From Phallusia mammillata (taxonomy: Eukaryota): a stretch of 64,000 bases of DNA. A model generated the notes under the pieces. That model was not told where the DNA came from, searched no databases, and worked only from the letters and a program-made list of their open reading frames with translations. The position numbers and the translations under genes were made by a program. This document shows, piece by piece, positions 4,201-25,500 of this stretch (position 1 is its first letter; every line of letters begins with the position of its first letter). Location of the stretch: positions 17,608,001 through 17,672,000 of the forward strand of contig OZ281498.1 in the NCBI GenBank assembly GCA_965637545.1, written 5' to 3'.

Positions 4201-4563
4201 TGAATCGAATTAGTTCCTGCACAAGCACCGTGTTCATGCTTTCGCTGTAGTCGGTCGGGTATTTGACTTGCACTTCCTCCAAATTAAACGGATCTGGAAG
4301 CTTCGACAGAATATCTGATGCCAGTTCTTGGACAATTACCTTAAATCGAGAAATAAACGATCTTGGTAAACTTAGAACGTTGTCAATGTAATACCTAGAC
4401 TAAGCAGGCAAAATTTTGATGCTAAAAAAGGTCATCCCACCTGCGGTGATTTTCCACCAGCTGATGTCGAAAGGCGGGGAAGCGTGACGAGAATTCCATC
4501 GAACATCTGTTGAGTTTCTTGCTGGTCTTTTGAAATGTCGGCGTTCAGATGAAATCCAAAAAC
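1229..4563 (-). CDS. DNAH3: Dynein heavy chain C-terminal domain exons (last seven exons, stop at 1229-1231)
   Basis: [90 protein letters not shown]. Confidence 0.93.
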
Positions 4564-7500
4564 CTAAAAATGCAACAGAAATATTGATTTAGTTTTTTTC
4601 ACAATAAAGGAGCAAAACCGCACCTTAACCTCTACAAAAGACTACGAAATATACATCGTTTTATGAGGCTAGGGATTATAGCCTAGGATTCAGCAAGACA
4701 AACAATAATCCAGCAAGAATACTGTGTATCCTCGTAATGAATACCTAATAATGCAAGAACACATACTGCAACTAAACTTATCGTATGTTACTTAGGCTTT
4801 TGACTTAAGCCAGGGGTGTCCAAACTGCGGCCCGCGGGCCAAATGCGGCCCCCGACGGCATTTTAAGTGGCCCGCGGCTGTTTTTTTTTAATTGTGTTGC
4901 GTATGGCCCGCCATAGTTTGGAACTTTGGATTAAGTTTTGAGGTTTTGGCGACGCTACATCACGCAAAAGCTTTTCATGGAACTTTATTTACCGGTAAAA
5001 AGGAAGGTGCTGACTCAACAAAATCACAAAATTTCCTTAAACCCGGTAAATTTGTGTCTTAATTCTGAATAAACGTTGGCCCGCGGGCGTCTTTACCTGG
5101 TAAAATTTGGCCCCCGTTAAAAAAAGTTTGGACACCCCTGACTTAAGCATTGGACCATTTCCACTCACCATATTTACTATTCAACCAACATACTATTAAG
5201 AAACGACACCCACAAAAGCTATTGCGCAATCCGACATCACGTGACATTGTTGATAAACATTAGACAACCGTAGCACAACGCGTAAAATGATCCACATTAA
5301 CGTGGGCGTTTTTTAAAATTCTCCACTAAAATTCCCCAATAGTCCTTCGGGTTCGGGTTGATGTTTAACTTGCGTATGTACTGGCATACTCGACACTTAA
5401 AAATGGCCATACAAATGATTTCTAAAATGTTTGGGATTATTTAAACTACTTATTAAAGCAAATGCTTTTCATAGGTTATGGTGTTACACTAATGAAAGAT
5501 ATTCTGTTTTGAAATCCAAATCTAATGGTTTGTAGGAAATCGTAAATGGGCATTTTTTAAAAGTTTGTCCAGGTAACAAAACACACTGGAGAGAATTATG
5601 TCCGTGGCATTGCTACGACACACCTGTTTCGCCATGTTGCAAAACAAACACCTTTGAAACTGTGTTAGTTTGTAATATACATCGCCAGCTAACCTTGACT
5701 TTAAATTCCATACAGTTAGCTGTATTTGAATACATGATCAAAATAATTCTGTCTTCATTAGTTCATCAGTTAAATTTTTCCACGCTTCTGCGATGAAAGC
5801 AAAGCTACGAAGTTTGATAACAAACAGAGCAAGAACAAAGGTTTTAAAAAAACTTTACGCAACCACACCCTCTTAATTGATTGCATCATTCTGTTATTTC
5901 ATCAGGTGCAAAAATTTAAATGATTCTGTTTCATGCTGGTAAGTGATTTGCGTTTGCGTTTTACCTATACCAAAGACGAGAGACTAAATTGGTTGACTAG
6001 TTCAAAAAGACATTTAAATAGTCTTCAACTTTCACGTGGAATTTGATGGCGCCGGTACTAAGGCTTTGCTTAGACATGGTGGACAACGACTAAATGAACA
6101 GATTTACAAATATTAAAGTTGCAGTTTTCCAGTTGATGACACAACCGAAACGAATACCCACAAAAATAAATAAAAAATACACCCAACCATCCACAAACAT
6201 TGACACTTATTTATTGCACATGACTGCACAAACGAACGACAATGCAATCATTGAGCACGAAAGCAAATAAAGTTACAGCAATTAATATTGGCTTTTATAA
6301 TTTTGTGGGCCAAATACATCAATACCTAAGTCACTAAGTGTATGGGGAGGCCAACACAAAAATATTTCACAAAAGTGTTGTTTACTACGATCCCTATAAA
6401 CAAACCCCAAGTTCCAACAATGCCATCGAAGCGAAAAATATGGTGGGTGTTTTCAACAACTACGCGTTCGACTTTGGACCTGATGCTGTAGCGGATGTAT
6501 CTTGTACAATGGGATGTTCGACGAAAAGGCGTTTTTTGTGTGTCGCAAGGTTTGTAATTTTCCATCCTATTAGTCGTGTGACGTTTGCCAAACGTTTCGC
6601 GCGATTTGATGTGGTAAAAACACTGAACCTCCTGAGTCTGTAGTCTCCACAAACACAGGACAAACTGTGTTATTGTGAAATACATAAACCAAAGCATTGC
6701 ATATATTCCTTTTTTAACAAATAGTTGTTTCCTCAGAAATGTATAAAATGTTACAAAAATGTGGCTTAAATTACGAGGTTATTGCGACATAGCTTTTAGC
6801 GCTTCTTAACCTCGCCTGTTGATGGTGAAACCACAGCTAATTAAATTAGACTTTTATACGTCTTATAGAATCGGGTAATTAGGATGAAATCGTGTAACGG
6901 CAATTTTAACGTAAACGTATTTTCATCTTTTAAGTTCAACAAAAGTTTGCGAAATGTGATCGCAATTCAAAGATACAAGACCAATAATATACGAGAGTGT
7001 GTAGGACAGATGTAAACGCAAACAAGAGTGGCACAGCAAGTTACATTTTGTTGTTACAAGAAAGACAGCCACCTATTTAGCAAGGCGATGCGAAGCAAAA
7101 ACGTCTTAGCTAGCCCTAATAATGTTCAGTGCACAAAAATGCTGACAAAAAATCTGTCGAAAATCGTTTTGCTGCTTTATACCAAATGGGAAAATCCCTC
7201 ACGGTTTTTGTTTGCCTAGCTCATGAAGGAAATATATAGGCTGAAACGCCACCAACAGAACACAAAGGAGAACGTTAACTGGCATGAAAGGGCGTTAGAA
7301 ACAAAGTCACGCAGGTTTGTTTTTACCGAAGACAAAAAAGATTGTATGCAGTGGCCCTACACTTTTCGAATCTAAAGGACTATTTGGAGGACAGGAAAGT
7401 ACAAAAAGTGCACAAAAATGCTGACAAAAAATCTGTCGAAAATCGTTTTGCTGCTTTATACCGAATGGGAAAATCCCTCACGGTTTTTGTTTGCCTAGCT

Positions 7501-10500
7501 CATGAAGGAAATATATAGGCTGAAACGCCACCAACAGAACACAAAGGAGAACGTTAACTGGCATGAAAGGGCGTTAGAAACAAAGTCACGCAGGTTTGTT
7601 TTTACCGAAGACAAAAAAGATTGTATGCAGTGGCCCTACACTTTTCGAATCTAAAGGACTATTTGGAGGACAGGAAAGTAAAAATCCATGTATTTTGTGA
7701 GCCTATAACTAAAAAGCAAAATTTAACTTCAACGGTTTCAAATTTCAAATTGCGCAAAGAAACAACTTTTAGTCATGTATAGTTTGACGGGGATATAGGT
7801 AACATGCGCATATAGGTTACATGCGACTACAGGCAAAGTTTGTGTAAGATACAAACCAGCGACTTTACCAGCATTAAACAGCCCCTTTGTTCTCCATCGA
7901 TCGATAACACGAGATGCTCAGTCGTTACGTTTTAAACCATATTTCGCAAGAGGAATTAGTATTGTTGGCTGACTTTAAGTTTGACACAAAAGCAAACTGA
8001 TTGAAAGTCTTGTTTTTATGCTGTGCAGGAAAACAAATGCTTGACTACTGCACAAGCACTGGAAAAAGTATTCTTACATCCATGTTGAATTCCTTCTTTG
8101 AAATATTTAACTTCAAACCATTTGTCGCTGGACTTTTTCATATCGACGATTCCGAGTACAAAAGCGTCTTAATAGTTGCAAGCAAATTCCGAATCTTTTA
8201 GCACTTTGTGCTTGACAGGTTAGCATTACAAACTTTCCAAAACGTTCATAGAAAACTTTCCAAAATTTTTCTAGATGTTTGTTTGTATGCTTTGAACATT
8301 CATACAACGTTTTTTTTTTTTTTTTAGAAATCAAGAATGCCAGAAAGCGGCATTTTTCTTTTCACTCACGAACAAGGGAAAGGTATCACAACAATGAAAT
8401 CAGCTGTACCATTTATGTGAGTAGCCAAATACATGTAACTTTTACTTAACGAAGGTACACAGGTTGCAGTTCTAAATGGTGGATGACTTGCGTACACAAA
8501 ATTTTCTATGTTTTAGCAAAAGGAACCAGTACAGAAATAAATAAATAAAAAATATTTGAAATCACCGATCACTGATGGTGCTGTAAGGAATAATCTAATA
8601 CAACTTAGCTGTTGTTGCAAATTTGTGTTTTGTTTTGCGCAATGACCTGTGACGTTAGGCCACAAAGTTATCGAAAAAAACTGGCTAATAACAAATGTTT
8701 CTTGATAGCTCATCGAGCGACGATGACCGTCATTTGGAAAGTCGCAACCGTGCTGCTCCAGAGCGCCCACAAGAGGATGAAGAAGACGACGTCGACCAAG
8801 AGGCAGAATACGAGATGGAGTCAGACGCAGAAGGATCTATTATGGAGGAAGACAGCGCTGATGCAGGAGAAAGTGAATCGGAGGAATTCCAAGATCAGTT
8901 TGACAAAAATGACGACAGTGAAGGAAATGGTATCATTCCAAACCCTAACGCAGCTTAGCGTTTGACTTGTGCAAACAAGATTTGCAACGATGTACATAGT
9001 AATAAAAAATGAGCTTCATGCTGTTTTGGACTTAATATTTCTTTTACAGTAACTAAACCCAACCAGCTTTTAAATGCCATTGTGATTAGTTGTTCTTTAT
9101 GCACTTTCATAACATTAAATTTGAGTTTAGGTTGATAATGGCCAGAGAAAAGTTTCTGTAAAATTATTTTATTTGTTGCCCACGCAGAGGGAAAATTTGT
9201 CATCATTAAAAGTTACATAGTGAATCTGGGTTGTTTCGTATGACTAAAATTAATCAAAAAACACAAACAATTAATTCAGGTTCAAATTAAACATGTTTGT
9301 ACACTTTGCTTAGTGCTGTATGGTTTTAACGTTGTAGGTTGTAGTATACATTTAGTAGAAGCTTGTAGAAACGCAGTTAAAAAAACGTGCTGCCTAAAAT
9401 GCTGTTTGGCTGCAAAATCACATACCATTCTATAATTTAAAACACCATAAAATTTGTGCATTAACAATAAAGTTGGAATAATATTGCTTATACACAGTGG
9501 TAATATTACAGCAATTAAACTAATACGTATGTTATTTGAATTCATTTAGTCGGGTATTGTTGCTTTGCTCAAAGGTGTAAAAAAAACGTTTGCCAAACAT
9601 GGTCGTAGTTACCCAAAACGTTTTAGTGTGATGTTAGCTTCAGTTTTATGTCGCAACTGATAGAGAAACTAGAGTTTCGGTAACGCCAAGTGACGTCATC
9701 CTGAAGGGCGGGGTTACTTCAGGTTTTACGTGGCACGTTACACGACGTCAATCCACGTCGCCACTCGCCAGCTTCTGCAGCGCTTAAGCAAACGCAGAAG
9801 AAAAATACTTTTAAACCGCTATGCCACATTTTCTAAACGGTGAAATTCATAAGAATGTACATCGGTGACGCAAAGTGACGTCATCCTGAAGAGGGTTACT
9901 TCAGGTTTTAGGTGACACGTGATGTATCGTCATTGCACGTCGCCAGCACTAAAGGCACAATGTCACCGTTCAGGCCAACGCTAAAGAAAACCGTTTTAGA
10001 CCGATATGTGAGGTTGTTTGAACGGTGTAATTCATAAGGATGTACGTCTTTCAAGGGTTCCTCAAAGACTATGAAATTTAATTCCTGCCAGAGCATAGTA
10101 AAACCAACTAACATATGAGTGACATGGCGCTTTTTGTTTTAAATCATATGTGGGGGTTTAAATATTGATTTGAAGACAAAACATAAAACTCTAATTCTTT
10201 AGGAGGCAAAACGACTTTAGTGTGCAAAATGATTCAAAAACCAATCGACTCTACTGCTTTAACAAAACGATTGAAGAAAAGTAAATGATTTAGTTGTCAT
10301 TCATACAGCGCAGTAATTCGGTTCCTGTTACATGTTTCATGTCAAAAAACGTACGTAACATTGTTCGTCAAGTCCGGAAGTAATCAGTGCGCAATACTTG
10401 AACGTGTTCCAAAGCGGATATTACTTCAATTTACGTTTTTTCAAGTAAGATTACATAGCCAAAGGAAAAAATCAATTGGGCCTAACAAAAAATATATTTC

Positions 10501-13500
10501 TACGTGGTATAATAGGGTGACGGATCTCTTTTGTTTGGATATCAGGGGTTAATAATTTACCATGGTGACTCGTGATTTGAGATCATAGACATTGTTCATA
10601 ACCTTTGACTGAAACTCAATTGCAACATAGTTTGTTTGTGGCATCAAGTAACGGAGGTAGAACTTGTTACGCGAAATGTATGTATCCGGCGGTTTAGAGT
10701 TTAGACTTCTTTAGGTTATGCGTATTTTTAAGTCAAAACCAACGTTTTAGATTTGCCTACAAATGGGTTGTGAAGAGTCAACTGTGACAATGCTTTAACG
10801 TCTTTAGGCCAAATTTGATATAAATCCAAATTCACTGTTTAGGGATCCGTGGCAAACAATATACAATGTCTTGTAAACTACAGCACACACACACATTAAA
10901 CCATACAAACTCAAACAAATTTAACACCGATTGATGATGCTAATAATCAAAACAAGGTGGATAAATTGATGGTTTTCTGAACCTCAGTGGTTTTTAGCTG
11001 AACGGAAACGTTTGCGAATAACGGAAAATATGTCAAAAATGTAGAGCCAATAGTCTTGAGTGACCTCTTGACTTGCTTGAGTACTCCTATGTCGTGGCAT
11101 TTAAGCAATTGTTAACACTAGAAATGGCCTTCAGTAACCTTGACCTGGAGTAACCCGCACCACGTTACAAACAAAAATACAAACCGTATTAGGTATAAAA
11201 AGCTGATGTCACGAATCTTGGGCGAACGCATCGATAAAAACCAACATTACGCCATGGAGGTTAAGCATCGTGGCAAATCAACAAGGTTCCACCAGACAAA
11301 AGAAAATGTTACGCAATTAGCTAATTCGTTTTGTTCGCACAGTTATTTGTCGGCATCTGAAATTGGGCATTTTAAGGCCAACAAAGTGTATTTACTTAAG
11401 GTTACAATGAGGTAACAAACTTTTATATTCCATCTCGAGGCTTTTGTTTGAACGGATGTATGGCGGATGTAGCAGTAAATTAAGAGCGCAATGACTCATG
11501 TCTACTATGGCGCCTAACAATGTTGAACTATGGACTAGAAACGCATTGCGACACCGTTTATTAGGGACTAAATAACGGAGGTGTCAGGTACAGAACCGAT
11601 CTCCATTTTTATTTTAAACCCAGCTTGTTGGCAATGCATATATGCAAGATCTAGGCATTCAACTGTGACGACTGTGTATTTTTCATGCAACGTCTTTGAG
11701 TGTATACATTTGGAAAATTCTTTAGTCCACGTAACAGAGTCCAGTTGAAGCGAAGTCCTAATTTTTTCGTCATGCTGATTGCAATCAATTTAAAAACATA
11801 TAAGCACGTTACAAAATAAAATACTCCTGAATGGGACATCGAAACGTCGACATATCATAATAAAGACTGCCAGAAGAGCTAAAAATTTGCTTGAGATACA
11901 AAACAAACCAAATTTTGAACAAAAAGTTATTGTTGTATTCAATGTTGGATTTTAAGCCATCTACTTCCAGGATCGTTTGCAGGAGTACAAAATGCAAAAA
12001 AGTATATCAAAATGGTGTTAGTAGTAAGCCTAACGGTATCATAAACCCACTGGCGCTTTTTTGCGCCGGGCTATGATGTGGTTTGTGGTAACTCTATAAT
12101 AATGACCCTGAGTGTCCTTGATATCCCACTTCACACAACGAAACGCAGTGGGGAGTTCTTGGTGATGTCACAATTTTGGAGCGTTCGCTTTAAAGGAGAA
12201 AAAATATCAAGAAAATTAACCTACCCTATCTATTTCAAAGGCCCCACAAAATATTAAGCAAATAAGTATATTTTACAATTTGTTAGAAGATTTTGCCATA
12301 AAATGACACATCATGCTTTATATACTTATGAAATAGCTATAAGCTGCTTGGTCGTGAAATTCTCACAACCAACTTGGCCTGGGGTAACCTACACCACTCG
12401 ACTATAGCCTTGTGCAACCCATCGCACCATGAACGCCCCATATACTCAAGACTACGAATAAACTCAACCAGTTGGGATGTGAAACGCAACTAATTAAACA
12501 AGGCTTTTGTTGTCCAATTTCATTGTGATAACTGATAGATACAAATATCAGTGAACCGATGTTGCTACAATCGTAGGGATATGCGAGAGCGTATCAGTCA
12601 ACGTGTTTTATGAGTAATTTTCCATTGGGCTCCTTTGTTTGCCGGGGCAGTGAACTGTTCCCAAACCCATCATGTCAAAGCCCCATCAATGTTTCGGTTT
12701 AGGAACTCATTACCCATGCTTGCAACACAAATAAGTGTTATTGAAACTCAAATATGGTTGAATCAGTATTGTGAGCCTAGCTTCTTGCATTATCATGCCG
12801 CAGTTTTTTTCTTTCGTTATGCATTTTCCTATATCAAGTAGTAAACTTTACACAATCTAACTGCAGTTAAGTGCTAATATATTGTAATTGGGGACTGCCA
12901 GCCGGACAGTACCAAACGGTTCGACAAGGTACAGATATTTGTTTTAGTTGCAACATTAATCGCGTGACACAAAATGGCGTATTTCGTACATATATATTAA
13001 GCGCCTGTGGGCAGTACACATTAGACTTAGAGGTAAGACAAAAAATAGATACTACACATGTTAGGGCTTCAAGAAATTAGGTATTTTACGACCAGGATAT
13101 TCAGGTATAGCAGAACACGGGGCTACAAATGGCAACTTGCTTAGGACTTTTAGCATAAAAAATGTTTGCACAGTCGGTTTAACGTACGAAGGCTCAGCGA
13201 TAAAATACATGTTTACCGACAATTGTCAGTTACGTATTAGTTTACAAATCCGGATAGCTCTAAGGTTTTACTAACTTTGAAAATTCCTAAACTGTATACC
13301 AGTACAACTAGTAAAAATTGTTTCGCAAAATACATTCTGGTGTTTTCAGGTTTTGTTAAACTACACTGCGTGTTATATTCTACCGTATCAAGTAGTAATT
13401 ATTTTTTTTCAATTAAATATTCATGAAAACTACATTGCCAAAGTTTCGCCCACACGTTGCTGGTTTGTTTCAAGTTGACGCCAGCGAATACAAAACGTTT

Positions 13501-16500
13501 CGAAACGAAAACTAAAGCAAAGTTTGTTGCACCTTTTAGTCGGTAAGTTCATGTTTATTTGTTTTAATTTCTACTGCTACAGGTTAAGCTATTGTCCACA
13601 TTTTTCAGGCTAGAGTCAAGAACCCAAATAACAGAAATAAGTCGCAATTTAGCATTAACCTTGACTGCAAAACCTCAAATACCTCTTATTCTGTGACTAT
13701 AGCTAAAATATGTATTGGAATATACATACTATAACCTATGCTAAAGATTCTGTAATACATAAAAGTTTCTTAGCATTTTAACCTTCAGTTCACTAAGTAG
13801 GCTACAACCTATTAGGACACAGATACTAAGTTGTTCTGTAAATATAACTGTCAAACATTAATACCTTTCTTTTCCAGGTTTTGAGGTAATCCACCTTGAA
13901 GCCAATACATATATCTCGAGAAAAATTGAAAACCATGGCTGTACCCATTTGGTAAGTGCCTCAAGCTAACACAGTTTTTTTAATAGTGACCTTTTTTGAT
14001 CTTGTAATGAACAACTTTGTCTCCTACTGGCTGTAGAATGAAGGACGACAACACATTTCAATTAACGTACAGATCTACAACTTCGATTCAACATAGTCTT
14101 CGGTTAGGATTTACGAAATAATTAAGTACTTAACCGTGAAAATGTTACTTATTAACTGCTTGTTTTCTTGGAAAGCCAGTGGTGGCCCGCATGGCCTAAC
14201 ACAAACTTCTAGTAAAAATGTCCTTCTGCGGACAAAAAATACAAAAATGCAATTTACACTGATCGCGATTTTCGGATATCTAGAAACAGTTCCAACACAC
14301 AACAGCTTATTGTATTCTAATGGCACGTTTGCTGCTAAACTGCGCACCCTTGTTCTACGTTATACCAGAAACAGGTATTACAAGACCATGGTTTTGTTTA
14401 AAACCATGCCCAAACGTCAGTGATCATAGCATCCCTAAACAAAACCAAGTCGGGTGACACAATATTCAAAAACAGGTTGCGTGACATGTCTGTACTGTAC
14501 TATCAAAATTTTACCACGTTTCAACGCTTTTCGCAGGGATGAATATGAGCGAAATGGGTGTCACGAAAATAGCGACCGTGGCGAACAGTACCAAGAGGAA
14601 CTTAACGAAAACGCTGAAGATTCGACAATTCAGCCTCCTGAGCTTCCGCCTGAGTCTGACGAAGATCCAGAGTCAGACTCGGGAGAATATAGTCGTGACG
14701 TCACGAGCTCGGAAGATGACGACAGTGAAGAAGATCGTGATGACGACATGTTACCAGATGAGGATGGTTTTGACCAGAGCGACAAAACCGCGGAAAACAA
14801 TGGAATATTTCCAAAGCGAAACGTCGCTAGACGTTGAGGTCAGCGACAAACAAATTGTACAGATACAATGTAGTGTAAAATGTTGTCAGTAAAAATGTAT
14901 TTATCGTGTACAGAATTGTGTAGTGTGTACTCGGATGCATAACGTTTTGAAACTGTTAAGTCTTTTCCAAACAATTCACGACTAGTTCAACGAAGAATCT
15001 ATGTCACTTTTTTGTTCATTGGCACGTGACAAAGGTTCAACCGAAAGCAGAAATAATTGACATGTTTTGAGGGTAGATACATGTAAAAAATATGCATGGA
15101 GATTGCATGAGTTTGAGACATCTGTAAATTTCGTCTTTTAAATCTGCCACGGAAGAGAAAAGCCTCTGACCTAAGGTATACTTGTCGCTCCTTGTTTTCT
15201 AATTGTTTTGCTCATTACCTGTTTCATTTAAATTAGCACATCTCTTCTGTTAATCGTATACACACGAAAATGACAATCGTTAAATCAAAAATGGTTTACA
15301 CTGAGATATTGGCATAGTATTTCAAGCTCTTGTTTTACGGTTTGTTGATTATAATCATTATTGGAGATACAGATGGCATGATTTTTGCCTTAATAGGATG
15401 TCATTAGGCTAGTTATTCTTTGAATGAAAGGCTGGTGTAATCTAAAGCGACTTGTGCAATGATTGATTTAATCACGTTTTATAATTCAAGATACCAAGAA
15501 ATAGGCTATGATTCAGAGATGGTTAATTTAATTATCCCTGGATAGCAGTTGCAACTTTTCTCTACATAATCACCCTGCAAAATACACAAACACGCGAAGT
15601 TAAAAAAAAGACATCGAAATTTACTTCTGAGTCAAACCAAGCATGTTTGTACATTTTTTCGGGTGAGGTATGGTTTAAACGTTTCAGATTGTAAATGAAG
15701 TTAGTAGAAATTGTCGCTGTTAACTCTTAGTTTTGTTGTACGTGCTGCAATTTATGCTGTTTGCTCGCAATATCATATCATACAATACAAATGTAAACAC
15801 CACAAGGTTTGTGCATTAACCGTCAAGTGACAACATTAATGCCTAAATACAGTGGTAACATTGCAGTATGGTTACAATCTGTGCCTCCGTTAATCAAATT
15901 AATTGTAGACATTTTATTGGTTTGTTAAAACTACAAAGGTGTAAATAAAAGGTGTACTAAGCATTGTCGTAGATACTTTTAGTTTGAGATTTATTTGTGG
16001 AAACTGGTCGAGACTAAAGTTTCGGCAAAGCTACGAAGTGTCATCGAGGGTTACTTCAATACACTTGCTTCACGTGACTGCATGTGTCGTCATCACACGT
16101 AATCAGCACTCAGAGTTTAATGTTACTGTTGGTAGGCACTCAGCCGCAAGTAAACGTTTAAAAAACGCATGCGCAAGGTTTAAAAAACAAATTTTGCACA
16201 GGCCTTTCTGAACGGCATAGAAATGGAATTGACGTCCAACAACGTAAGAAAGCAAATGAGCGTGTAAAGGACATTGCCAGTGGGAGTCCGAGTGTGTCAT
16301 AATAAGAAAGCAAACAAAACTACGAGTCGTACGATACTTTTTTAAGTCATGAGTATTTTGAGCCTTGCTAAATGACTTTAGACAATATACACAAATGTTA
16401 ATATGTATAGTACTAAATGCCGCATTGGTTTGCTTAACGCTTTAAATCCAAACGGCTGTACTGCTACAAATCAAGAAACGGTTTAAAAGGTCAATGAATT

Positions 16501-19500
16501 CTCAGCGCAGTAATTTGGTTCCTCTTTCCAAACTACACGTCACAAAAACTGATCATTGCTTATTAAACCGGAAGTTACCAGTGCGCAATACACGGACACT
16601 TTCCAAGGCGGAAGTCACTTGATTCATGTTCTAAAATAGTCTTACATATCCAAAAATGGTTTCATTCATAGAACAATATTCAAAAAGCATTTTTGGGCCT
16701 TCGAAAGAAATGGGGATTTAACTGAAGGGTAATTGTTGGTATAGCGGACTTTGATATTGCATCACGAGGTACTTGTTGTGGCGGAAGTGTACCGGAAGTG
16801 GATGCCTTCGTGCCAGCGAAAGTTTAGGAAGAAAATGATAAATGGGGATTGTTTACCATGGTGACTCATGTCTACCATGGCAACGTTCACTGCAGATAAT
16901 CTTTGCTTAGAAAATTATTGGCACATATTATCCAAGGCGCCACGCATGTAATGGACTTGTTATATTAGACGTCATATTAAGACGAAATGATTTGTACGCA
17001 ACTGATTTAATTACTTTTTGATAGGTCTTGTGTGCTATAGCTGTTTAAACTGCGACGTGTTTGATTCGACCCCTGCTAGTGAATTGCGACGATGTTTTTT
17101 TTACGCAACGTCTGTACTTTTTAATACTTTGTGAAATCTATATCCAATCCAATAACAAGGCACATAAATTAACAAGAAGGTACTGGTGCAATCAGCTCGT
17201 TCGAATATCAATGATTAATTTGGACACTTTTTATCACAGCCAAGTAAATTAAGCTGGTCAAATACATCAACACGTCAAATAGTAAACCGATAGTCTTAAG
17301 TAACATTAGGACTTGACCACGATAATGTTCAATTAGTAAACCCGTAAAGTGAAATTTAAACTACGATTGACCCTAAAAACAGTCGAAATATGGTCTCTGA
17401 CAGTGGCATGCATAGTTTTTCTTTGAATAAAATGCTGGTGCAATCTAAAGCGACTTGTGCAAATATTGCTATTGGCACGCGGTAGTTTGCGATACCACGA
17501 AATTTGATTCAGAGAAGGTTAATTATCTTTTGGATCGCGGTTGCAACTATTCTTTACGTATTCACCATGGGAAATATACAAACACTCTAATGTTAGCAGG
17601 AAGACGTTCATTGGTAACGAAGCAAATAGATGGATAAAAAAGCCATTTCGTACACCATTAAGTGGTCGTTATCCAAGGTAAACAACATTCCATGGTCAAC
17701 AAGAAGACTAAAAATCATGTGTCAGTACCAGAAGTAGTACAAACAATCACTGTCACAGGGCAATTACAGTTGAGACAGAAAAATTATCTACTTTCAAATG
17801 GTGTCCTTTTGCTGAATTTTAGCGATCTGCGCTTAATATTTGCAAGATGTCGTAAACAAATCCGCTTGGTTCTGTTTCTTTAGTGTGTGCGCGACCTTCA
17901 GTAACATTAGGACTTTTGACGTTTAAACATTTGTACTTAATAAACCTTAGTGACCCGATTTAGGCTAAAGTGGTTTGCCGAGTACCACAAACAAAAATGT
18001 GTAATCAAGATACTTTGCCCAGTTTTTCCATGAGGTAATCCAGGTACTTTGACCCGTTTACCGTGTGCACATTAAAGGTCGAACATTACCTCTTGTCAGT
18101 AGTTTGAACCAGATGTTTTTAATCAGCCTAAAATATCAATGTTATAGTTATTGGTCAATTCAGTACAAAAACTCAAAAATTTTCTGCAATGTTTTGTGTA
18201 CAAAATTAAAAAAACAGACCATTCATTCAATTTCAACCCTCATCTTGGCCTGAAATAACCTCCATCGAACCTTGAGTAACACATCACGCCACAAACGCAT
18301 GAACGTGGACTGTGACAACCAAGAGCGGCACATACACAACAAGGGTTTACGCACAATTCCATCTGTGTTTGCACATACAGTACCTTTTTCAAAACCCTAG
18401 GATCAATTTTGCTGCAATGCTTCATGAGTCAGCAGCTCAGATAAAGTAATTCACCAGTAATTTTCCATCGGGCTTCTTTGTTTATGAGGCAGTGGTCAGT
18501 TTGCACAACCAATATGTAAAAACGACAGCAGTCATTAGGTTTTGGAACTTATTAACCATATGTCGAACACAAAAGGTGATGACGAAACTTTATTGCGCCA
18601 TGCTAAACCTTCGGACAACCACCATTTTTTAGTTTAACAACCAAAACAAAGACATTTGATTAAACTAGTTTAACAGCGGACCTTGCAATTGCAGTTTCAA
18701 ATTCAAAAATAGTTCAACAGAAATTATTTGTAACAATAATTGTTTTATAATTGTTAAATAAACCTGCACTTTGTGTGCTTTGATTTGAAGCAAATAATTA
18801 ATTGCAAATATGCTGCCACTTTTTCTGAATTGCGGATACCGCAATAAATATGATGCAATCCAAAGAAATGCAATCAGTTAGCTGAAAAAGGGGAAGTTTA
18901 GGGTGAATACCCACGCGCCATTTTCTCTACAAAACGAAGGTATTGGCTGAAGTCGAGATCTATGCTCAGTCAATCAGGGAGAACAGAAGTGATTTATTAC
19001 GTGGTTATTCGGTTGTTACACAAGACACAAGTGAAACATACAGGTGTATTAATTTTTTACCATAACCGGTTGAAGCCTACAACCAGAAACAAAAACGGTT
19101 TTCACTGTAGGCAAAGTGACTGTTTGAGCAGGGCTGAAACAAAACAGAGATAATTTCTTTACATAAGTTGCGGCTTCAGGGGAATAGACTTTATTCGAAA
19201 AGGTTGTTAAAATCCATTAGAACAGCTATTACATTTTTAAGTTTGCTCAAGACCTTAGCAAAAACACTGTTTGCATTTCGCGTTAAAAACAATGCTTTGC
19301 ACATAAAAATAAGCTTTTATTAGTTTACAAAACTTTATAGCTGTATGGTTTCGCTAACAAAAATATTCTTACATCATGTTTCAGTATAACCACCAAATCA
19401 ACTGTTGAACGAAACTACGTCTTGTTGTATTGTTCAGAATTTGTTGCATTAGATTAGACTGTCCGTTAAATTGTACCCCATCAAGTAAAATTTGTCTCAG

Positions 19501-22500
19501 TTCAATATTCATGCAACGGATCGCCCAAAAGTTTCGACCATACGTTGCTGGTTTATTTCAAGTTGACGCCAGCGAATACAAAACTTTTCGAAACTAAACA
19601 AGCAAAGTTTGTTCCACCTGCCAGTTTTTGCTTGTTGGTAAGTTCAAGTATATTGGTTTTAGTTTCTATACTTTACAGAAGTTAATGTCCACATTATAAA
19701 TCTACAAACCAAATCACAGATTTAAGTCGAAAAGTTATAATGTTGATTGGTACCAGTACAATTTTTGACGTTTAATCCTATGTGCTGCATTTAAACAAAC
19801 TATTTAACGACCATTAATTTGACCACATATGACCTTAAGTAATCATTTCAAATTAGGACAAAGACACAACAGGAAAATGAAATAGGCCAATGCGTTTTTT
19901 ATTAACTTGTCAAACATAAATTGCATGAAAAAACAACTCATTCATAGCTTTCAAACTGTTTTTAGCACGTTTCCCAACAGTAGGAACTAATAACTACAAA
20001 TGTAAGACTTACCAGGCCATTGCTTTTCTTTCAGTTTTGAAATAAATCTTCTTGAAGCCAAGACATACTGTATATCTCGTGATCATTGAAAAACATGGCT
20101 GTGCCTATTTGGTAAGTGTCCAGCGCTAAAAAGATTCCTTCTAAAGTAAACTTTTTTCGACCTTATACAACTTTCAACCGAGGAGGCAGTACAATGAGGA
20201 AACACCTTTGACATTACTTGCAAATTTACAAATCCAATCCCAGTTCCTCTGTAATATATGTCCAGTGTCATCGAACAGATTTAAAGTTAAATGGCTTTTC
20301 AGCATGTTACTCTCAACAGTGCCTTAAGGTGGCTTCACTAGCCTATACGAAGGTCGTGCCACCAGCTTCACTGTTGAGACCGTACAGGTCGAAACAATGT
20401 GCACCGCCTGAGGCTCGATTCAACATAGGTTTTGGGTTAGGTTTTCGTGGTTGTAATGTAGGAAACAGAAATACTTTACCTTAAAAAGTTACTTATTAAC
20501 CAGCCTACATGTTTTTTAACACAACTGTTGTAGCCCGCATGGCCAAAAAGAAACTCTTTGTGAACAAAGTATACTGTAATAAAAAAAATACTACTATACA
20601 ATTCAAACCGGGATCTTTTAAAGACCTAGTAACAGTGTCAAGGGCCCCTATTGTTACATTTTGTCCAGAAAAGGATCAATTAATAACCATGAGTTTGATT
20701 CGTTTCATACCTAAACGTCAGTGATTAGACGCATCCTCGAAAGAAGCCTATCTTTATGACACAATATTCATGTTAGGTAACATATAACTGTAGAAAAATT
20801 ACCATCTAAATTATACCACGTATAAACGCTTTTCGTAGGGATGAATATGAGCCGAAAGGACGTCAGGAAAATAGCGATCGTGGCGAACAGCACCAAGAGG
20901 AACAAAACGAAAACGTTGAAGATTCAGCCACAAACCAGCCTCCTGAGCATCCGCCCGAGTCTGACGAAGATCTAGAGTCAGACTCGGGGGAGGATAGTGA
21001 CGTCATAAACTCGGAAGATGACGACAGTGAAGAAGGTAGTGATGACGACATGCTACCAGATGATGATGGTTTCGACCAGGCCGGCAAAACCGCAGAAAAC
21101 AATGGAATATTTCCGAAGCGAAACCTCACCCGACGTTGAGGTCAGCGAATTGTACATATACAATGTAGTGTTGAATGTTGTCAGTGAGAAATAATTTACT
21201 ATGTACAATTTTATTTTGTGTGTAGTTAAATATTTTGAGAATGTTAAGTCTGTTTCTTTAAATTTAAATTTACGACTAGTTTAACAACAACAATGAATCT
21301 ACGTCACTTTTCATTGGCACGAGACAGAGGTTCAACGGAACATTTTTTTAAAAGTTTACGTTGTAGATTTTGGATTAAGCAGTGGCGTTCATACGATATT
21401 AAATCTTTAGAAATAAATGTACATATTTTATCGATGTTTGTTTGTGAATATTAAAACATTGAAAAGAGACTATGTTTTACTGTAGTCAGTCTTAGGGCAT
21501 TCTTTTGGACAGCACAGTTAAAACGTTTGATTGATTCCAAGGCACACGCTTCAGGTTATTGCAACGTATTACACCAATCGTTAAGCACACACAACGTTTG
21601 GTCGTAAAACCGATCGTACAGCCCAGACAAACGCAGGGCAGAAAAAGGATTTGTAGAGTGGGTAAAGTCAAACAGTTTGTTGACTAAAGCTAAGTGAAGC
21701 AAAAAATAGCTTGTGTGGAAACGAGATAGTTGGATTAAGTTGAAATCGCATTACAAAGTGGTAGAGTGTGCCCATCAGAAACAAACGATTCAGTCAAACT
21801 GCCTGCTAACTGATTTCATTAAATATTCGTAAAAATAAGAAATGCATTTACACTGTCACATTGCTTTTAAGAAAACAATTTAAGACACCAACACGTTTCA
21901 CGTAAACTAACCTTACTTATATACAGAGAACACTGTATATAGGCTAAGTGTTTAAAACTACAAACTGAACTTCACAATAAACCAAGTTTACAAATAGACC
22001 TAAACTACCTCCTTTGTAGTAAATGGACATATTTGTCTGGAAAATGAGACTATAACTTAAAAGGACACAATTTCTCAATTCTTAAATATATACCTTGGAA
22101 CTTTATTTAACTTGATTGTGCATTGTAGTTTAAATATGTGTATAAACTTAATATTTTTTCAAACTTATACTAGTTAGATTTAAAGCAAAGTCAAATCTAA
22201 ACGTACCTCTGGGTGGGTGTTCAAGGGTAAATTCTTGATGTATTTGATGTATTCCTCGTAATCCCTTTCGTCAGGGGCGAAATAGACATCGTTTGATGAA
22301 AACTTATATCCAGCAGTTTCGAAGACTTCCGAACACATGAAATTGCTGAGCAAGCTTTTTAATAACCGCCTGTCGTAGTCGTCGGTCACTCTACCACCGT
22401 AGTTACATTCACCTAAAAGAAAATTGTTGCCGTTTGCTGACAGGGTATTCCGCCCAAGCAAAAACACATAAATTCTGAAAGTTACTTCGCGGGCCGCACA

Positions 22501-25500
22501 AAACCCCTTAGGGGGCCGCATGCGGCTTGTGGGCCGCGTGTTTGATACACCCCTGGTTTACAGTTTTGTTGCTGTTTTTGTATACAACTGTATATTATTA
22601 GAGTCCTCTTACCAATAAGGTAGTTTAGTGCAACCAGAGGTACTTCGTCATAATCTTTTAGAAACATTTGAGTTTGCCTGACGCTGATACGCAGGTCGGA
22701 CTCGTTAAATCCATACGATATATTCCAACCAAGAGGTCCGAAATTTCGTCGTTCTTGAACGAGAGCGTGAAAGAAACACAATGAGAAGAGAATTTTCTTC
22801 CATGTCTAAGTAACACGACAACAACATTAAAAACGTTAACAGTAGCTACTGCAGGTATTCAGGCTGTGAATAACTCTAACTTTTATACATTAACGCAATT
22901 TACAGTTAGAGAGGCAGCCCTTTTACGAAAAGGTGTATTTACTCATTGCTTCAAAATCTATATTACCTAAATTGTAATTATAGCCTGTCTGTCAAGGTTT
23001 TTTTAACCAAAAATGGCGTGACCGACACCCACAATATCTATTGTTCTTTAGCGCCCACTCTCGGATAACTTATTTGGAGTAATATTTGTTTAATTCATTT
23101 TTTGCTCGAGTTTTTCACCTAGTGTACAAATTATTTGGCGGATGTATTTTGCATCACAATTATACTCTTTTATAAGTTTTTCTTACTATGGACACCCACG
23201 GACAAATAACCAGGTTTAGAATTTGAAAGTATAGAAGCTTGAAATTTGAAATGTACGCAAGGACCCATTGAAACCTCAGGTTAAAAACCACTAGCCGAAA
23301 TTTAAAAAAGCTCTTCAAAAAAACAAAAATAATAAAACTCTCATACCGAATCTTTATCCTCTGAAATGCCGTGAAAAAATGTAAGATCTGATATAGGGTC
23401 GTTTTTGTATGAGCGAAGTAGATTAGCTCTCAATCCCTTGGGTGGTTCGTTTGTCATCTTGACACTGTTTTGCAATACGGGAACGGGAAATTCGGGTGAT
23501 GGATAACTTGTCAACCACAAACGAAACTCGTCACGTGTCGTAGTTTTATCAGTGATAACCTGTAGAAAATGTAACTGGTTTTGTATTTTTAGGTGGCAAA
23601 ATATCTATTAAAGATTTGCGCTATAGTTTAGATTATATCAGAGGCTCTGAACATACTGTCGTTTGAGCCTTGGTCGCTTTTAAACATCAGCATTTTGCAA
23701 ACAACAAAGTCCCAATTGTTGCAAAATCAACTACTGGATGAGTTTATTGTTTTCAAACTGTCGCCTTTTTATACTTGTAAAATGACTCAGTGCAATCATG
23801 CATAACAAATTAAGTTTAGATATTCGGCCTTCGACAACTTTGCAATAAACAAAAGTACATTAACAAATTTATTTAAAACAGCATTAACAATTGGACCTTC
23901 ACTTATTTCTCAAACAAAAAAATGTATTTGCATCCCAAACCACAAACAAAAATGGATAATTCCACAAGGCGTGCAATTAGATTTATTATCCGACTTTGTT
24001 TACCTCTTCACAAATTCTTCGTAATTCGGGCAACCACGAAACAGCCAAATGGCAATTCTGTAGAACAATCCAAGTCCCGTTATGTCTTGCATGCTCGATC
24101 ATTCGCTCCGCTATAGGGCCTTGACCTTGACCGAGAGAGATAGTTTGCATGCCAGATGACATACCTAAAAACATTGGATGTTAAAATTCAGTGCAGTGGA
24201 ATTTCCTTTGGATTAAAATTGAGCTAGAATTTATCGTATTGTTTGTAAAATAAGCACGTTAAACAGCATGATTTTGGCAATTCCGAGGAGTATCCTACCA
24301 TGCGTATTGCGTACACAGATTCAAAGCAGCAGAACAAAAATTCAAACAATTTTGTTCATATCCAATGCAAAGAAAAAAACATGTTAAAACTATTCGTTGT
24401 TCTCTGAAACATTCTGGATCAAGCAGCTATATGGTTCACTTTTATCATAAAAATACACAATTGGGACAATAAACTGGTGGATTATTACAATCGCTACTAA
24501 CAGGCATTTAAAAAGTACTATTTACTAATACATGCAAGACTACGTTGTGTTTTGAGATATGGTACGATTTTTCCCTCGGGTGTATGACATAATCAGGTTC
24601 ATGCAAATCGTTTTTGATTGTAGTTTTGTCTACGCCCAACGACATACTGTATACAATTCCCTCCTGATTGGAGCTCTGCGGTGCCAAATTATTCTCGGTT
24701 TCCTTGGGTGTTGTAATTTTGACGTTGAACGGAAATTCAGTAAGCTTCTCGGTTTCAGCACTTCGACCGGGGGCTAATGTTACTTCGGGTACACCACTTA
24801 ACATCGGCGGAGAAAGAAGCGACTTTTTCCCGTGTACGGACTCGCCAAAGCCTGACATTGATTCAGTCATGCCCAAAAGCCGCCCACTAATTTCATTTGC
24901 CGTTATAGTTGGGGCTTCAGTCGGCATTGGGGGCCGTGGGGGCGACCTAGGGCGCAATGACGCCCTTCTGGAGAGTGGGTTCCTGGGTGTTTTTGGGGTA
25001 GTTGCTTGTGTGGTGGTCGGTTCTATGATACCTAGGGTGATGGACATGCACGATGTAACGTTTACGTGACATGCAGAAATTAAGATGACGGTGCAGTTTT
25101 GTGACGGTTACAAAAAATGAAAAATAACGGATATAACACAAGAACTGCATACAATTGGTACATAAGTGTAAAGCAAAAACAAATGAAAATCTAAATTATG
25201 ACAACGTGCAAGAAAATATGAACAGTTTTTAAAGAAAACTATGGATAAAAAACTATTTTGGAAAACATGTTTTCATAAACGCTCCCTGAAAATTTATAAA
25301 TATTCAAGTTAGAACTTTTGGCAAAACCACGCAAGTATTAGCTTTTTACTGCTGTTTTTAAAGTGAAAATTTGTTGAAACATTTATATTAACCTTTTTCC
25401 TCTGCAAACTTTACCAAGCTCGCCATCGGATCAGCACCAGGTGATAAAATAAATATAAGCGGAGTTGAAGAATCAGAATCTTGATAACTTGAATGCAGGT

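What the first reader, a model, noticed from the sequence alone, without database searches (positions are those of the whole stretch)
5920..21139. Unrecognised family of three ~105-aa hyper-acidic proteins nested antisense in the dynein intron
Seen: all three have tiny first coding exon(s), a phase-2 intron and one Asp/Glu-rich exon ending in a shared motif FD-x(5-6)-E-x-NGI[F/I]P. B and C differ by many substitutions, but their two indels are whole codons that offset each other (both 105 aa), while flanking DNA has many arbitrary indels; this suggests selection on the protein. There is no signal peptide. B and C end in a basic patch ([16 protein letters not shown]); A instead has one near the N-terminus (KNARKRH). 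Inference: disordered acidic proteins with an NLS-like patch, architecturally like prothymosin-type histone or protamine chaperones, or acidic tubulin-tail mimics. I recognise no homolog.
Basis: partly seen in the sequence, partly recalled or inferred. Interest (0 to 1): 0.75.

Follow-up and report, generated by a model that had tools for sequence, protein, structure and literature searches.

The report
Sea-squirt orphan acidic proteins, IAP-binding-like start
Three neighbouring two-exon genes inside a sea-squirt dynein intron encode small, very acidic, disordered proteins with no known relatives, and two of them begin with the four residues that cell-death inhibitors (IAPs) are known to grip, which suggests a testable role in cell-death control.

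Summary
They are tandem paralogues. Exons are 80-88% identical and the introns about 52%. dN/dS is 0.30 in the acidic frame against about 0.7 in the other two frames. Both coding indels are whole codons.

A is a true but distant third member. A better first exon is ATG 8394..8416|GTGAGT, phase 2, which encodes A-V-P-F where B and C encode A-V-P-I.

The family has three members in the 240-Mb genome, so it is not a transposon. Pfam, NCBIfam, PDB, two very large protein searches and one metagenome scan gave no homologue.

Expression is untested. The only runs that hold the locus are DNA.

New lead: B and C start M-A-V-P-I, and after Met removal this is the canonical IAP-binding motif. The genome has 71 BIR-matching stretches, and tunicates lack Apaf-1 and caspase-9.

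I rate "real selected orphan genes" at about 0.8 and "IAP binding through the N-terminus" at about 0.3. The prothymosin-type chaperone reading rests on composition only.

The parts
8328..8416 (+). Gene A, exon 1 (corrected model). Acceptor-like T16-AG at 8326-8327. In-frame ATGs at 8337 and 8394. Codons for A-V-P-F at 8403-8414, then 2 nt. GTGAGT donor at 8417.
   Evidence: The exon-1 signature pattern hits only A, B and C in the window, and 4 places in the whole genome.
8417..8708 (+). Gene A intron (292 nt, phase 2, GT..AG)
   Evidence: inferred from homology with B and C, with no RNA evidence
8709..8958 (+). Gene A, acidic exon 2. It has 82 full codons, ends in the motif F-D-x5-E-x-N-G-I-I-P, and stops at TAG 8956-8958. 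AATAAA lies at 9001.
13878..13951 (+). Gene B, exon 1. Polypyrimidine-AG at 13876-13877, where B/C conservation begins. In-frame TAA at 13887. ATG at 13935. Encodes M-A-V-P-I plus 2 nt. GTAAGT donor.
13952..14536 (+). Gene B intron (585 nt, phase 2), 51-54% identical to C's intron
14537..14837 (+). Gene B, acidic exon 2 (99 full codons plus TGA)
14838..15045 (+). B 3' block conserved with C (81% identity), presumed 3'UTR. No AATAAA or ATTAAA within 465 nt of the stop codon.
20035..20111 (+). Gene C, exon 1. Polypyrimidine-AG at 20033-20034. In-frame TGA at 20080. ATG at 20095. Encodes M-A-V-P-I plus 2 nt. GTAAGT donor.
20112..20838 (+). Gene C intron (727 nt, phase 2)
20839..21139 (+). Gene C, acidic exon 2 (99 full codons plus TGA). 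The first start codon in this frame lies only 29 codons before the stop, so the frame needs the spliced-in ATG.
21140..21340 (+). C 3' block conserved with B. ATTAAA at 21398 and AATAAA at 21412 lie just beyond it.
9247..21340 (+). Two colinear copies of a roughly 6.1-kb tandem unit (9247-15045 and 15597-21340, blocks 67-78% identical). This duplication made B and C.
22180..22781 (-). Host gene exons: dynein heavy chain AAA lid domain
3419..4339 (-). Host gene exons: dynein heavy chain C-terminal domain (profile positions 31-147)

Best explanation
A, B and C are a sea-squirt-restricted tandem family of two-exon genes on the strand opposite to a dynein heavy-chain gene, inside one of its long introns. 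Each encodes a protein of about 90-109 aa. Three features define the proteins: a tiny exon-1 peptide with the conserved A-V-P-[IF]; a disordered spacer that is very acidic, Ser-rich and Lys-poor, with 4-6 CK2-type S/T-x-x-D/E sites; and a conserved C-terminal motif F-D-x(5-6)-E-x-N-G-I-[FI]-P.

Shown here: the anatomy, the paralogy, purifying selection between B and C, and the absence of detectable homologues.

Inferred mechanism. In B and C the initiator Met is removed before the small residue Ala, which exposes A-V-P-I. This is the canonical IAP-binding motif. It docks in the peptide groove of BIR domains of this genome's enlarged IAP set. B and C would then act either as cytosolic IAP antagonists, working like the insect Reaper/Hid/Grim/Sickle proteins, or as IAP-controlled short-lived substrates. 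The acidic tail and the C-terminal motif would give a second, unknown contact or regulation by phosphorylation. A carries the same tetrapeptide masked behind M-K-S (or a 22-residue extension), so it would be inactive in this respect unless processed.

My odds: real, selected protein-coding genes about 0.8; IAP binding through the N-terminus about 0.3 (the confidence given below).
For: Gene reality:
- The exon/intron conservation contrast is clear.
- dN/dS is 0.30 with dS 0.33, close to the 26-33% mismatch of neighbouring duplicated non-coding blocks.
- Frame controls and neutral simulations support the acidic frame.
- Both coding indels are whole codons.
- Both ATGs have an in-frame stop upstream, and an unspliced reading stops at the donor.
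- C's acidic frame has no start codon of its own for 70 codons.
- There are only three members in 240 Mb.

IBM reading:
- Exon 1 of B and C encodes M-A-V-P-I with two synonymous differences and no replacement.
- The published IBM consensus is A-[KTVI]-[PAE]-[FEISY] at the N-terminus (PMC8620624).
- Smac's IBM is AVPI, and AVPF is a BIR-binding tetrapeptide (PMC3760131).
- A-V-P-[IF] is one of the few elements shared with the distant paralogue A.
- The genome has 71 BIR-matching stretches.
- Two translated BIRs keep W, D(+4) and E(+9), the spacing of the residues that hold the N-terminal Ala in XIAP BIR2. They match IBM-binding BIRs in the PDB, including DIAP1 BIR2, at E about 1e-19.
- No Smac_DIABLO match was found at E <= 1 (a weak negative).
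- Tunicates lack caspase-9 and Apaf-1, and Ciona has 18 IAPs (PMC10959488; PMC13159474).
- Like RHG genes, these are short, fast-evolving, tandemly duplicated, and conserved mainly at their ends.
- They are Lys-poor: 1-3 Lys per exon-2 product.
Against: - There is no expression evidence. The two runs that hold the locus behave as genomic DNA. All 12 guessed-RNA runs held next to none of B's sampled words. The two of them that I laid gave nothing on 8690-14689 apart from a 33-nt repeat piece.
- In A the tetrapeptide is not at the N-terminus. This suggests the constraint on A-V-P-[IF] may not need a free amino group.
- IBM-like N-termini occur in about 5% of human proteins and are normally masked by NatA acetylation (PMC7810383). 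An Ala start is a typical NatA substrate.
- RHG proteins are not acidic.
- No G-W duplet or other RHG-like feature exists in exon 2, and no sequence homology to any RHG protein or Smac was found.
- Selection evidence is moderate: p is about 0.001-0.05 depending on the model.
- B lacks a canonical poly(A) signal within 465 nt.
- No orthologue from another ascidian could be examined.
Confidence: 0.3

Rival explanations
1. The proteins are acidic disordered proteins whose terminal motifs bind a partner other than IAPs. A-V-P-[IF] plus the following aromatic or hydrophobic residue is an ordinary hydrophobic docking motif that works whether or not it is at the very N-terminus. Its identity with the IBM in B and C is coincidence.
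For: A keeps A-V-P-F behind M-K-S. IBM-like starts are common, about 5% of human proteins. The C-terminal motif is equally conserved and has no link to IAPs.
Against: The exact Smac-type tetrapeptide sits exactly at position 2-5 in the two paralogues under measurable selection. From general residue frequencies I estimate this at about 6e-5 per protein; that figure is my own estimate, not a tool result. No alternative partner is suggested by any search.
Confidence: 0.3
2. The proteins are polyanionic nuclear chaperones or sinks for basic proteins (histones, sperm nuclear basic proteins) or tubulin-tail mimics. They would be prothymosin-like in architecture, with a C-terminal basic patch as the NLS in B and C.
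For: D+E is 35-38% and net charge -26 to -27. They are predicted to be disordered. There are 4-6 CK2-type sites. B and C have a basic C-terminus. The host is an axonemal-type dynein gene, which hints only faintly at testis or cilia.
Against: No homology to prothymosin or any chaperone family was found. The basic patch is absent from A, and by recall it does not fit the classical K-[KR]-x-[KR] NLS. Composition-driven function would not explain the strict conservation of the two short terminal motifs.
Confidence: 0.2
3. These are not functional protein genes. They are a duplicated, GA-rich intronic segment, or a non-coding transcript, whose open frames survive by composition and by the youth of the B/C duplication. 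A would be an unrelated acidic ORF.
For: No RNA evidence. No homologues. In neutral simulations, 21-33% of runs keep the frame free of stops. GA-rich sequence stays open in two frames.
Against: The conservation pattern follows exon borders, splice sites and the start codon. dN/dS is lowest in the acidic frame. A shares exon-1 codons, donor position, intron phase and the C-terminal motif despite saturation elsewhere. No Rfam family matched.
Confidence: 0.12

Closest known systems
Insect RHG proteins (Reaper, Hid, Grim, Sickle, Michelob_x, IBM1)
   Same: They are short proteins that start with an IAP-binding motif directly behind the initiator Met. They have very low sequence conservation outside the ends, form tandem paralogue clusters, and have small terminal coding exons (PMC8620624 passages). 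B and C fit the published consensus A-[KTVI]-[PAE]-[FEISY].
   Different: RHG proteins are known only from insects. There is no detectable homology. B and C have no G-W duplet or Trp-block/GH3 element and are extremely acidic. In paralogue A the motif is not N-terminal. No binding or killing activity has been shown.
Smac/DIABLO
   Same: The tetrapeptide is identical: A-V-P-I (PMC3760131).
   Different: By recall and, Smac is a helical mitochondrial protein of about 240 aa whose motif is exposed by presequence removal. Here there is no presequence, no Smac_DIABLO domain and no predicted fold.
Cryptic IBM-like N-termini of cytosolic NatA substrates
   Same: The IBM-like N-terminus is generated co-translationally on a cytosolic protein. 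It could bind IAPs only when unacetylated (PMC7810383).
   Different: Those are ordinary proteins with unrelated functions, where the motif is incidental. Here the motif is among the best conserved parts of a tiny protein.
Prothymosin-alpha / parathymosin type acidic nuclear proteins
   Same: They are of similar size (about 100 aa), extremely acidic and disordered, with a basic stretch near the C-terminus in B and C.
   Different: There is no sequence homology (no family at E <= 10 for B or C). The exon structure differs. The basic patch is missing in A. B, C and A have conserved hydrophobic terminal motifs that, by recall, prothymosin lacks.

Membership tests
RHG-type IAP antagonists | IBM A-[KTVI]-[PAE]-[FEISY] directly behind the initiator Met | tested here: met
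   B and C encode M-A-V-P-I; the consensus comes from PMC8620624. A does not meet it: its A-V-P-F follows M-K-S or a 22-residue extension.
RHG-type IAP antagonists | Free, unacetylated N-terminal Ala in vivo | not testable with these tools
   This needs N-terminal proteomics. PMC7810383 shows that Ala starts are often acetylated and thereby masked.
RHG-type IAP antagonists | Second shared element: Trp-block/GH3, or the Hid-like C-terminal consensus with a G-W duplet | tested here: not met
   The exon-2 products of A, B and C contain no Trp at all. The C-terminal motif is F-D..E-x-N-G-I-[FI]-P instead.
RHG-type IAP antagonists | Detectable sequence relationship to known RHG proteins | tested here: not met
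   The profile search of 1.84 billion representatives gave 0 hits at E <= 0.001. Pfam gave none. Only exon 2 was searched; exon 1 is too short.
RHG-type IAP antagonists | Binds BIR domains and induces caspase-dependent death | not testable with these tools
   Only target availability was checked: 71 BIR-matching stretches, with groove residues kept in two of two BIRs examined.
Smac/DIABLO (PF09057) | Smac_DIABLO helical domain and mitochondrial presequence | tested here: not met
   No Pfam hit. No secondary structure predicted. The motif sits at position 2, without a presequence, in B and C.
Prothymosin/parathymosin | Match to the family profile | tested here: not met
   Pfam scan at E <= 10 gave 0 families for B and C. 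For A it gave only BKRF4 (E 0.6) and PTPRCAP (E 2.7), both far below their cut-offs.
Prothymosin/parathymosin | Highly acidic, disordered protein of about 100 aa with a C-terminal NLS | tested here: inconclusive
   Acidity and disorder are met. The basic patch occurs only in B and C, and its NLS activity is untested.
Transposon or repeat fragment | Many dispersed copies in the genome | tested here: not met
   Protein and DNA searches of the 240-Mb genome find only B and C, and for A only A itself.
Taxonomically restricted (orphan) protein-coding gene | Coding signature without homologues outside the lineage | tested here: met
   Selection. No homologues. Caveat: how well the protein libraries cover other ascidians is unknown, and the gene itself is not in them.
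Taxonomically restricted (orphan) protein-coding gene | Transcribed and spliced as modelled | tested here: inconclusive
   The holders X1 and X2 are DNA. Two of 12 guessed-RNA runs were laid, on 8690-14689 only, and show nothing there.

The most novel reading that the evidence does not exclude
B and C are chordate counterparts, by convergence, of the insect Reaper/Hid/Grim death activators. They would be small cytosolic proteins made with a ready IAP-binding N-terminus, induced by transcription to neutralise the expanded ascidian IAP set. This would supply the main switch for caspase activation in a lineage that has lost Apaf-1 and caspase-9, for example in tail regression at metamorphosis. 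A would be a masked or decoy paralogue. The acidic CK2-type tail would tune stability or IAP choice.
Probability: 0.17. Interest if true: 0.85.

Novelty: new variant of a known kind. Interest (0 to 1): 0.55.

Why it matters
Ascidians run caspase-dependent apoptosis without Apaf-1 and caspase-9 and with an enlarged, rearranged IAP repertoire (PMC10959488; PMC13159474). How their caspases are released from IAP control is not described in the papers I could search.

Cytosolic proteins born with an IAP-binding N-terminus are so far known as dedicated death activators only in insects (PMC8620624). A selected, lineage-restricted family that starts with the exact Smac tetrapeptide would give a concrete candidate that is cheap to test: peptide-BIR binding, and mRNA injection into embryos.

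Even if the IAP idea fails, the locus is a clean example of an orphan gene family. It was born or diverged beyond recognition inside an intron, expanded by tandem duplication, and is constrained only at two short terminal motifs.

Tried and rejected
**Transposon or repeat fragment.** Rejected. Only B and C (and A alone) turn up in 240 Mb by protein and DNA search.

**Cassette exon of the dynein gene on the minus strand.** Rejected. The minus-strand frame is open for 88 aa in C but only 56 aa in B. The splice signals and the ATG fit the plus strand.

**Known RNA family.** None at gathering score in 4500-22300.

**Known protein family.**
- Pfam: none for B or C at E <= 10. A had two sub-threshold acidic-bias hits.
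- NCBIfam: one meaningless hit at E 0.76.
- PDB profile: 0 hits at E <= 10.
- ESM Atlas: no usable hit.
- Word-index search of 5.8 billion proteins: 1 candidate, none scored.
- HMMER profile against 1.84 billion representatives: 0 hits.
- Metagenome scan: 594 pattern matches, 0 confirmed.

**RNA evidence.** None obtained.

Replaced; see the report text.

**Fourth family member.** The genome-wide exon-1 pattern gave one extra hit, on C4. It is an internal exon ending ...A-V-P-I-L, with no ATG and no acidic exon downstream, so it is a chance hit.

**Mitochondrial presequence in A's possible 22-residue extension.** By eye it has two Glu and few basic residues, so it is not presequence-like. I ran no predictor.

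**Literature.**
- 'IAP-binding motif' with 'ascidian': 0 papers.
- 'IAP-binding motif' with 'tunicate': 1 irrelevant paper, on ULK1/2.
- 'IAP, Ciona, Smac, Reaper': 1 paper, which describes no ascidian antagonist in the passages I saw.
- 'Apaf-1, caspase-9, tunicat, Smac': 8 papers, none relevant by title or abstract except the same one.

I did not open any supplementary files. Those of PMC13159474 and PMC8620624 may list ascidian IAPs or IBM candidates that I could not see.

Full report
**What is there**

The window is part of a 240-Mb animal genome, contig C5:17,608,001-17,672,000. Earlier notes of this scan call it a sea squirt, and one names Phallusia mammillata; I did not verify the species.

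On the minus strand lie dynein heavy-chain exons: the AAA lid domain at 22180-22781 and the C-terminal domain at 3419-4339. No dynein domain match lies between 4339 and 22180. I did not check the exact intron borders.

**Genes B and C**

Each has a short first exon that begins at a polypyrimidine-AG site (13876-77 in B, 20033-34 in C). Each carries an in-frame stop (TAA 13887, TGA 20080) upstream of the ATG (13935, 20095). Exon 1 encodes M-A-V-P-I plus two bases and ends at a GTAAGT donor. If the intron were retained, the frame would stop within the donor (TGG TAA).

After a phase-2 intron of 585 or 727 nt comes one exon with 99 full codons and a TGA at the same position in both genes. In C, the first ATG/GTG/TTG in the acidic frame lies only 29 codons before the stop. 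The 99-codon open frame therefore makes sense only with the spliced-in start.

B against C, by segment:

| Segment | Identity |
|---|---|
| Upstream of the acceptor-like site | 45% |
| 5' part of exon 1 | 80% |
| Exon-1 coding part | 88% |
| Intron | 51-54% |
| Exon-2 coding part | 87% |
| 211 nt behind the stop | 81% |
| Further downstream | 43% |

Conservation follows the proposed exon borders. Ascidians trans-splice, and earlier notes report the leader in this genome. The acceptor-like site where conservation begins may therefore be a spliced-leader acceptor. That is inference only.

**Selection**

The exon-2 proteins are 78% identical.

- Nei-Gojobori counts give 15.0 synonymous differences over 56.3 sites and 22.0 non-synonymous differences over 237.7 sites. 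That is dS 0.33, dN 0.10 and dN/dS 0.30, with Fisher p = 0.0012.
- The other two frames give 0.72 and 0.69.
- dS is close to the divergence of the duplicated non-coding blocks around the genes, which are 67-74% identical. The exon is therefore not merely young.
- I placed the 37 observed substitutions at random. Twenty or fewer amino-acid changes arose in 49 of 10,000 runs (non-coding transition share), 270 of 10,000 (coding share) or 464 of 10,000 (extreme share). In 21-33% of runs there was no stop.
- The two coding indels are whole codons, whereas 3 of 9 gaps in the conserved non-coding blocks are multiples of three.

Together this is moderate but consistent evidence for purifying selection on the acidic frame.

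**Origin**

A self-comparison shows seven colinear blocks that define a roughly 6.1-kb unit: 9247-15045 duplicated as 15597-21340. This duplication made B and C.

Protein and DNA searches of the whole genome find no further copy. The family is not a mobile element.

**Gene A and the corrected model**

A's acidic exon (8709-8958) is only 37% identical to B. BLASTP gave E = 0.013, with 8 of 2000 shuffles reaching the score against B and 48 of 2000 against C. It shares the C-terminal motif F-D-x(5-6)-E-x-N-G-I-[FI]-P (for the C-terminal part alone, 2 of 5000 shuffles against B and 81 of 5000 against C).

Reading the DNA, I found a much closer counterpart of the B/C first exon 292 nt upstream of the acidic exon. 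It runs from ATG 8394, has codons for K-S-A-V-P-F, then two bases, then GTGAGT at 8417. The phase is again 2, and the frame runs into the acidic frame.

A 20-letter signature (A-V-P codons, [IF] codon, two bases, GTRAGT) hits exactly three places in the window, with 0 expected. It hits four places in the 240-Mb genome, and the reversed control hits 0. The fourth is an unrelated internal exon. I chose the pattern after seeing A, so the window test is partly circular. Even so, three of four genome-wide hits lie upstream of the three acidic exons.

An earlier in-frame ATG at 8337, just behind a T16-AG site, could add 19 residues. A is then 90 or 109 aa.

With this model, A has no basic patch. The KNARKRH stretch is the same DNA read in another frame.

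**No relatives found**

- Pfam, NCBIfam and a PDB profile search gave nothing meaningful.
- The word-index search of 5.8 billion proteins scored nothing.
- The HMMER profile of A+B+C against 1.84 billion representatives gave 0 hits at E <= 0.001.
- The ESM Atlas gave no usable hit.
- The metagenome scan confirmed 0 of 594 pattern matches.

All of these used exon-2 translations only.

The libraries do not hold the gene itself, and I do not know how well they cover other ascidians. "No homologue" therefore means none detectable in the libraries I could search.

AlphaFold2 on the three-row alignment gave no secondary structure, pTM 0.12 and mean pLDDT 63. This is consistent with disorder, although the alignment is shallow.

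**Expression**

This is the main gap. The only two runs holding B's exon 2 (X1, X2) cover all 30 bins of 8690-14689, introns and intergenic DNA included, so they are genomic DNA.

Twelve runs guessed to be RNA held next to none of the 37 sampled words. I laid two of them (X3, X8). X3 gave one 33-nt piece on a repeat, and X8 gave nothing. C and A's first exon were outside the laid stretch.

This neither supports nor refutes transcription.

**How it may work**

The family-wide features are two short conserved end motifs around a disordered spacer. The spacer is very acidic (D+E 35-38%, net charge -26 to -27), has 4-6 S/T-x-x-D/E sites and 1-3 Lys.

The N-terminal motif is the specific clue. B and C start M-A-V-P-I, with two synonymous differences and no replacement between them. 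By established knowledge, Met is removed before Ala. What remains is A-V-P-I, the IAP-binding motif of Smac. It binds a BIR groove through its free amino group and its P1 Ala (PMC3760131, passages). It also fits the RHG consensus A-[KTVI]-[PAE]-[FEISY] (PMC8620624, passages).

Targets are plentiful. The genome has 71 BIR-matching stretches. Two of two translated BIRs keep W, D(+4) and E(+9), as in XIAP BIR2. One of them matches IBM-binding BIRs in the PDB at E about 1e-19 to 1e-20. No Smac domain was found (this is weak, because the search works exon by exon and no control genome carries the family).

Tunicates lack caspase-9 and Apaf-1, and Ciona has 18 IAPs (PMC10959488, passages; PMC13159474, passages).

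I therefore commit to IAP binding through the N-terminus as the most likely specific mechanism, at about 0.3.

**Against this reading**

- A's tetrapeptide is masked behind M-K-S.
- IBM-like starts occur in about 5% of human proteins and are normally acetylated and silent (PMC7810383, abstract and passages).
- RHG proteins are not acidic, and their second motifs are absent here.
- There is no binding, expression or orthologue evidence.
- A paper on DPP8/9 unmasking an IBM (PMC12152192, seen only in the search listing) shows that masked IBMs can be exposed. By recall of that enzyme's specificity, A's M-K-S does not fit it.

**Comparison and verdict**

B and C work like RHG proteins or Smac only in the sense of carrying the motif. 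They are not members of either family, because the membership tests on the second motif and on homology failed.

The finding is a real and somewhat unusual orphan family with one sharp, cheaply testable lead. I score interest at 0.55. The strong form of the lead, ascidian Reaper-like death activators, gets probability about 0.17 and interest 0.85 if true.

Noticed in passing
   Followed up: no
window 11829-11889: A very high-copy element of about 60 bp. Word depth is about 3560 in DNA run X1 and 13,400 in X2, against about 60-140 and 160-640 beside it, and contigs break there. No Rfam family reached gathering score in 4500-22300.
   Followed up: partly
own genome, e.g. C5:9.755-9.797 Mb, C7:20.665-20.697 Mb, C6:3.41-3.49 Mb, C3:20.48-20.61 Mb: 71 stretches match the BIR domain, in several tight clusters, so the IAP repertoire is large. 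Several hits carry stop codons and may be pseudogenes or intron read-through.
   Followed up: partly
window 15015-15045 (B) and about 21305-21340 (C): A block of about 31 nt, 180-210 nt behind the stop codon, is almost identical in B and C while its surroundings have diverged. It may be a 3'UTR regulatory element.
   Followed up: no
window 14308-14310 and other intron sites: DNA run X2 carries a 21-nt and a 4-nt insertion in B's intron and many SNPs in the intergenic DNA. Among the rows shown, no X2 variant fell in A's exon 2, B's exon 1 or the laid part of B's exon 2; 32 rows were not shown. The X1 'variants' at 14534-14651 are the C paralogue cross-mapping.
   Followed up: no
L013 (G000:C4:6701638): The only other genomic match to the exon-1 signature is an unrelated exon end ...A-V-P-I-L|GTAAGT. 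It has no ATG and no acidic exon downstream.
   Followed up: yes
window 14835-15300: B has no AATAAA or ATTAAA within 465 nt of its stop codon. A has AATAAA 43 nt after its stop. C has ATTAAA and AATAAA about 260-275 nt after its stop.
   Followed up: no
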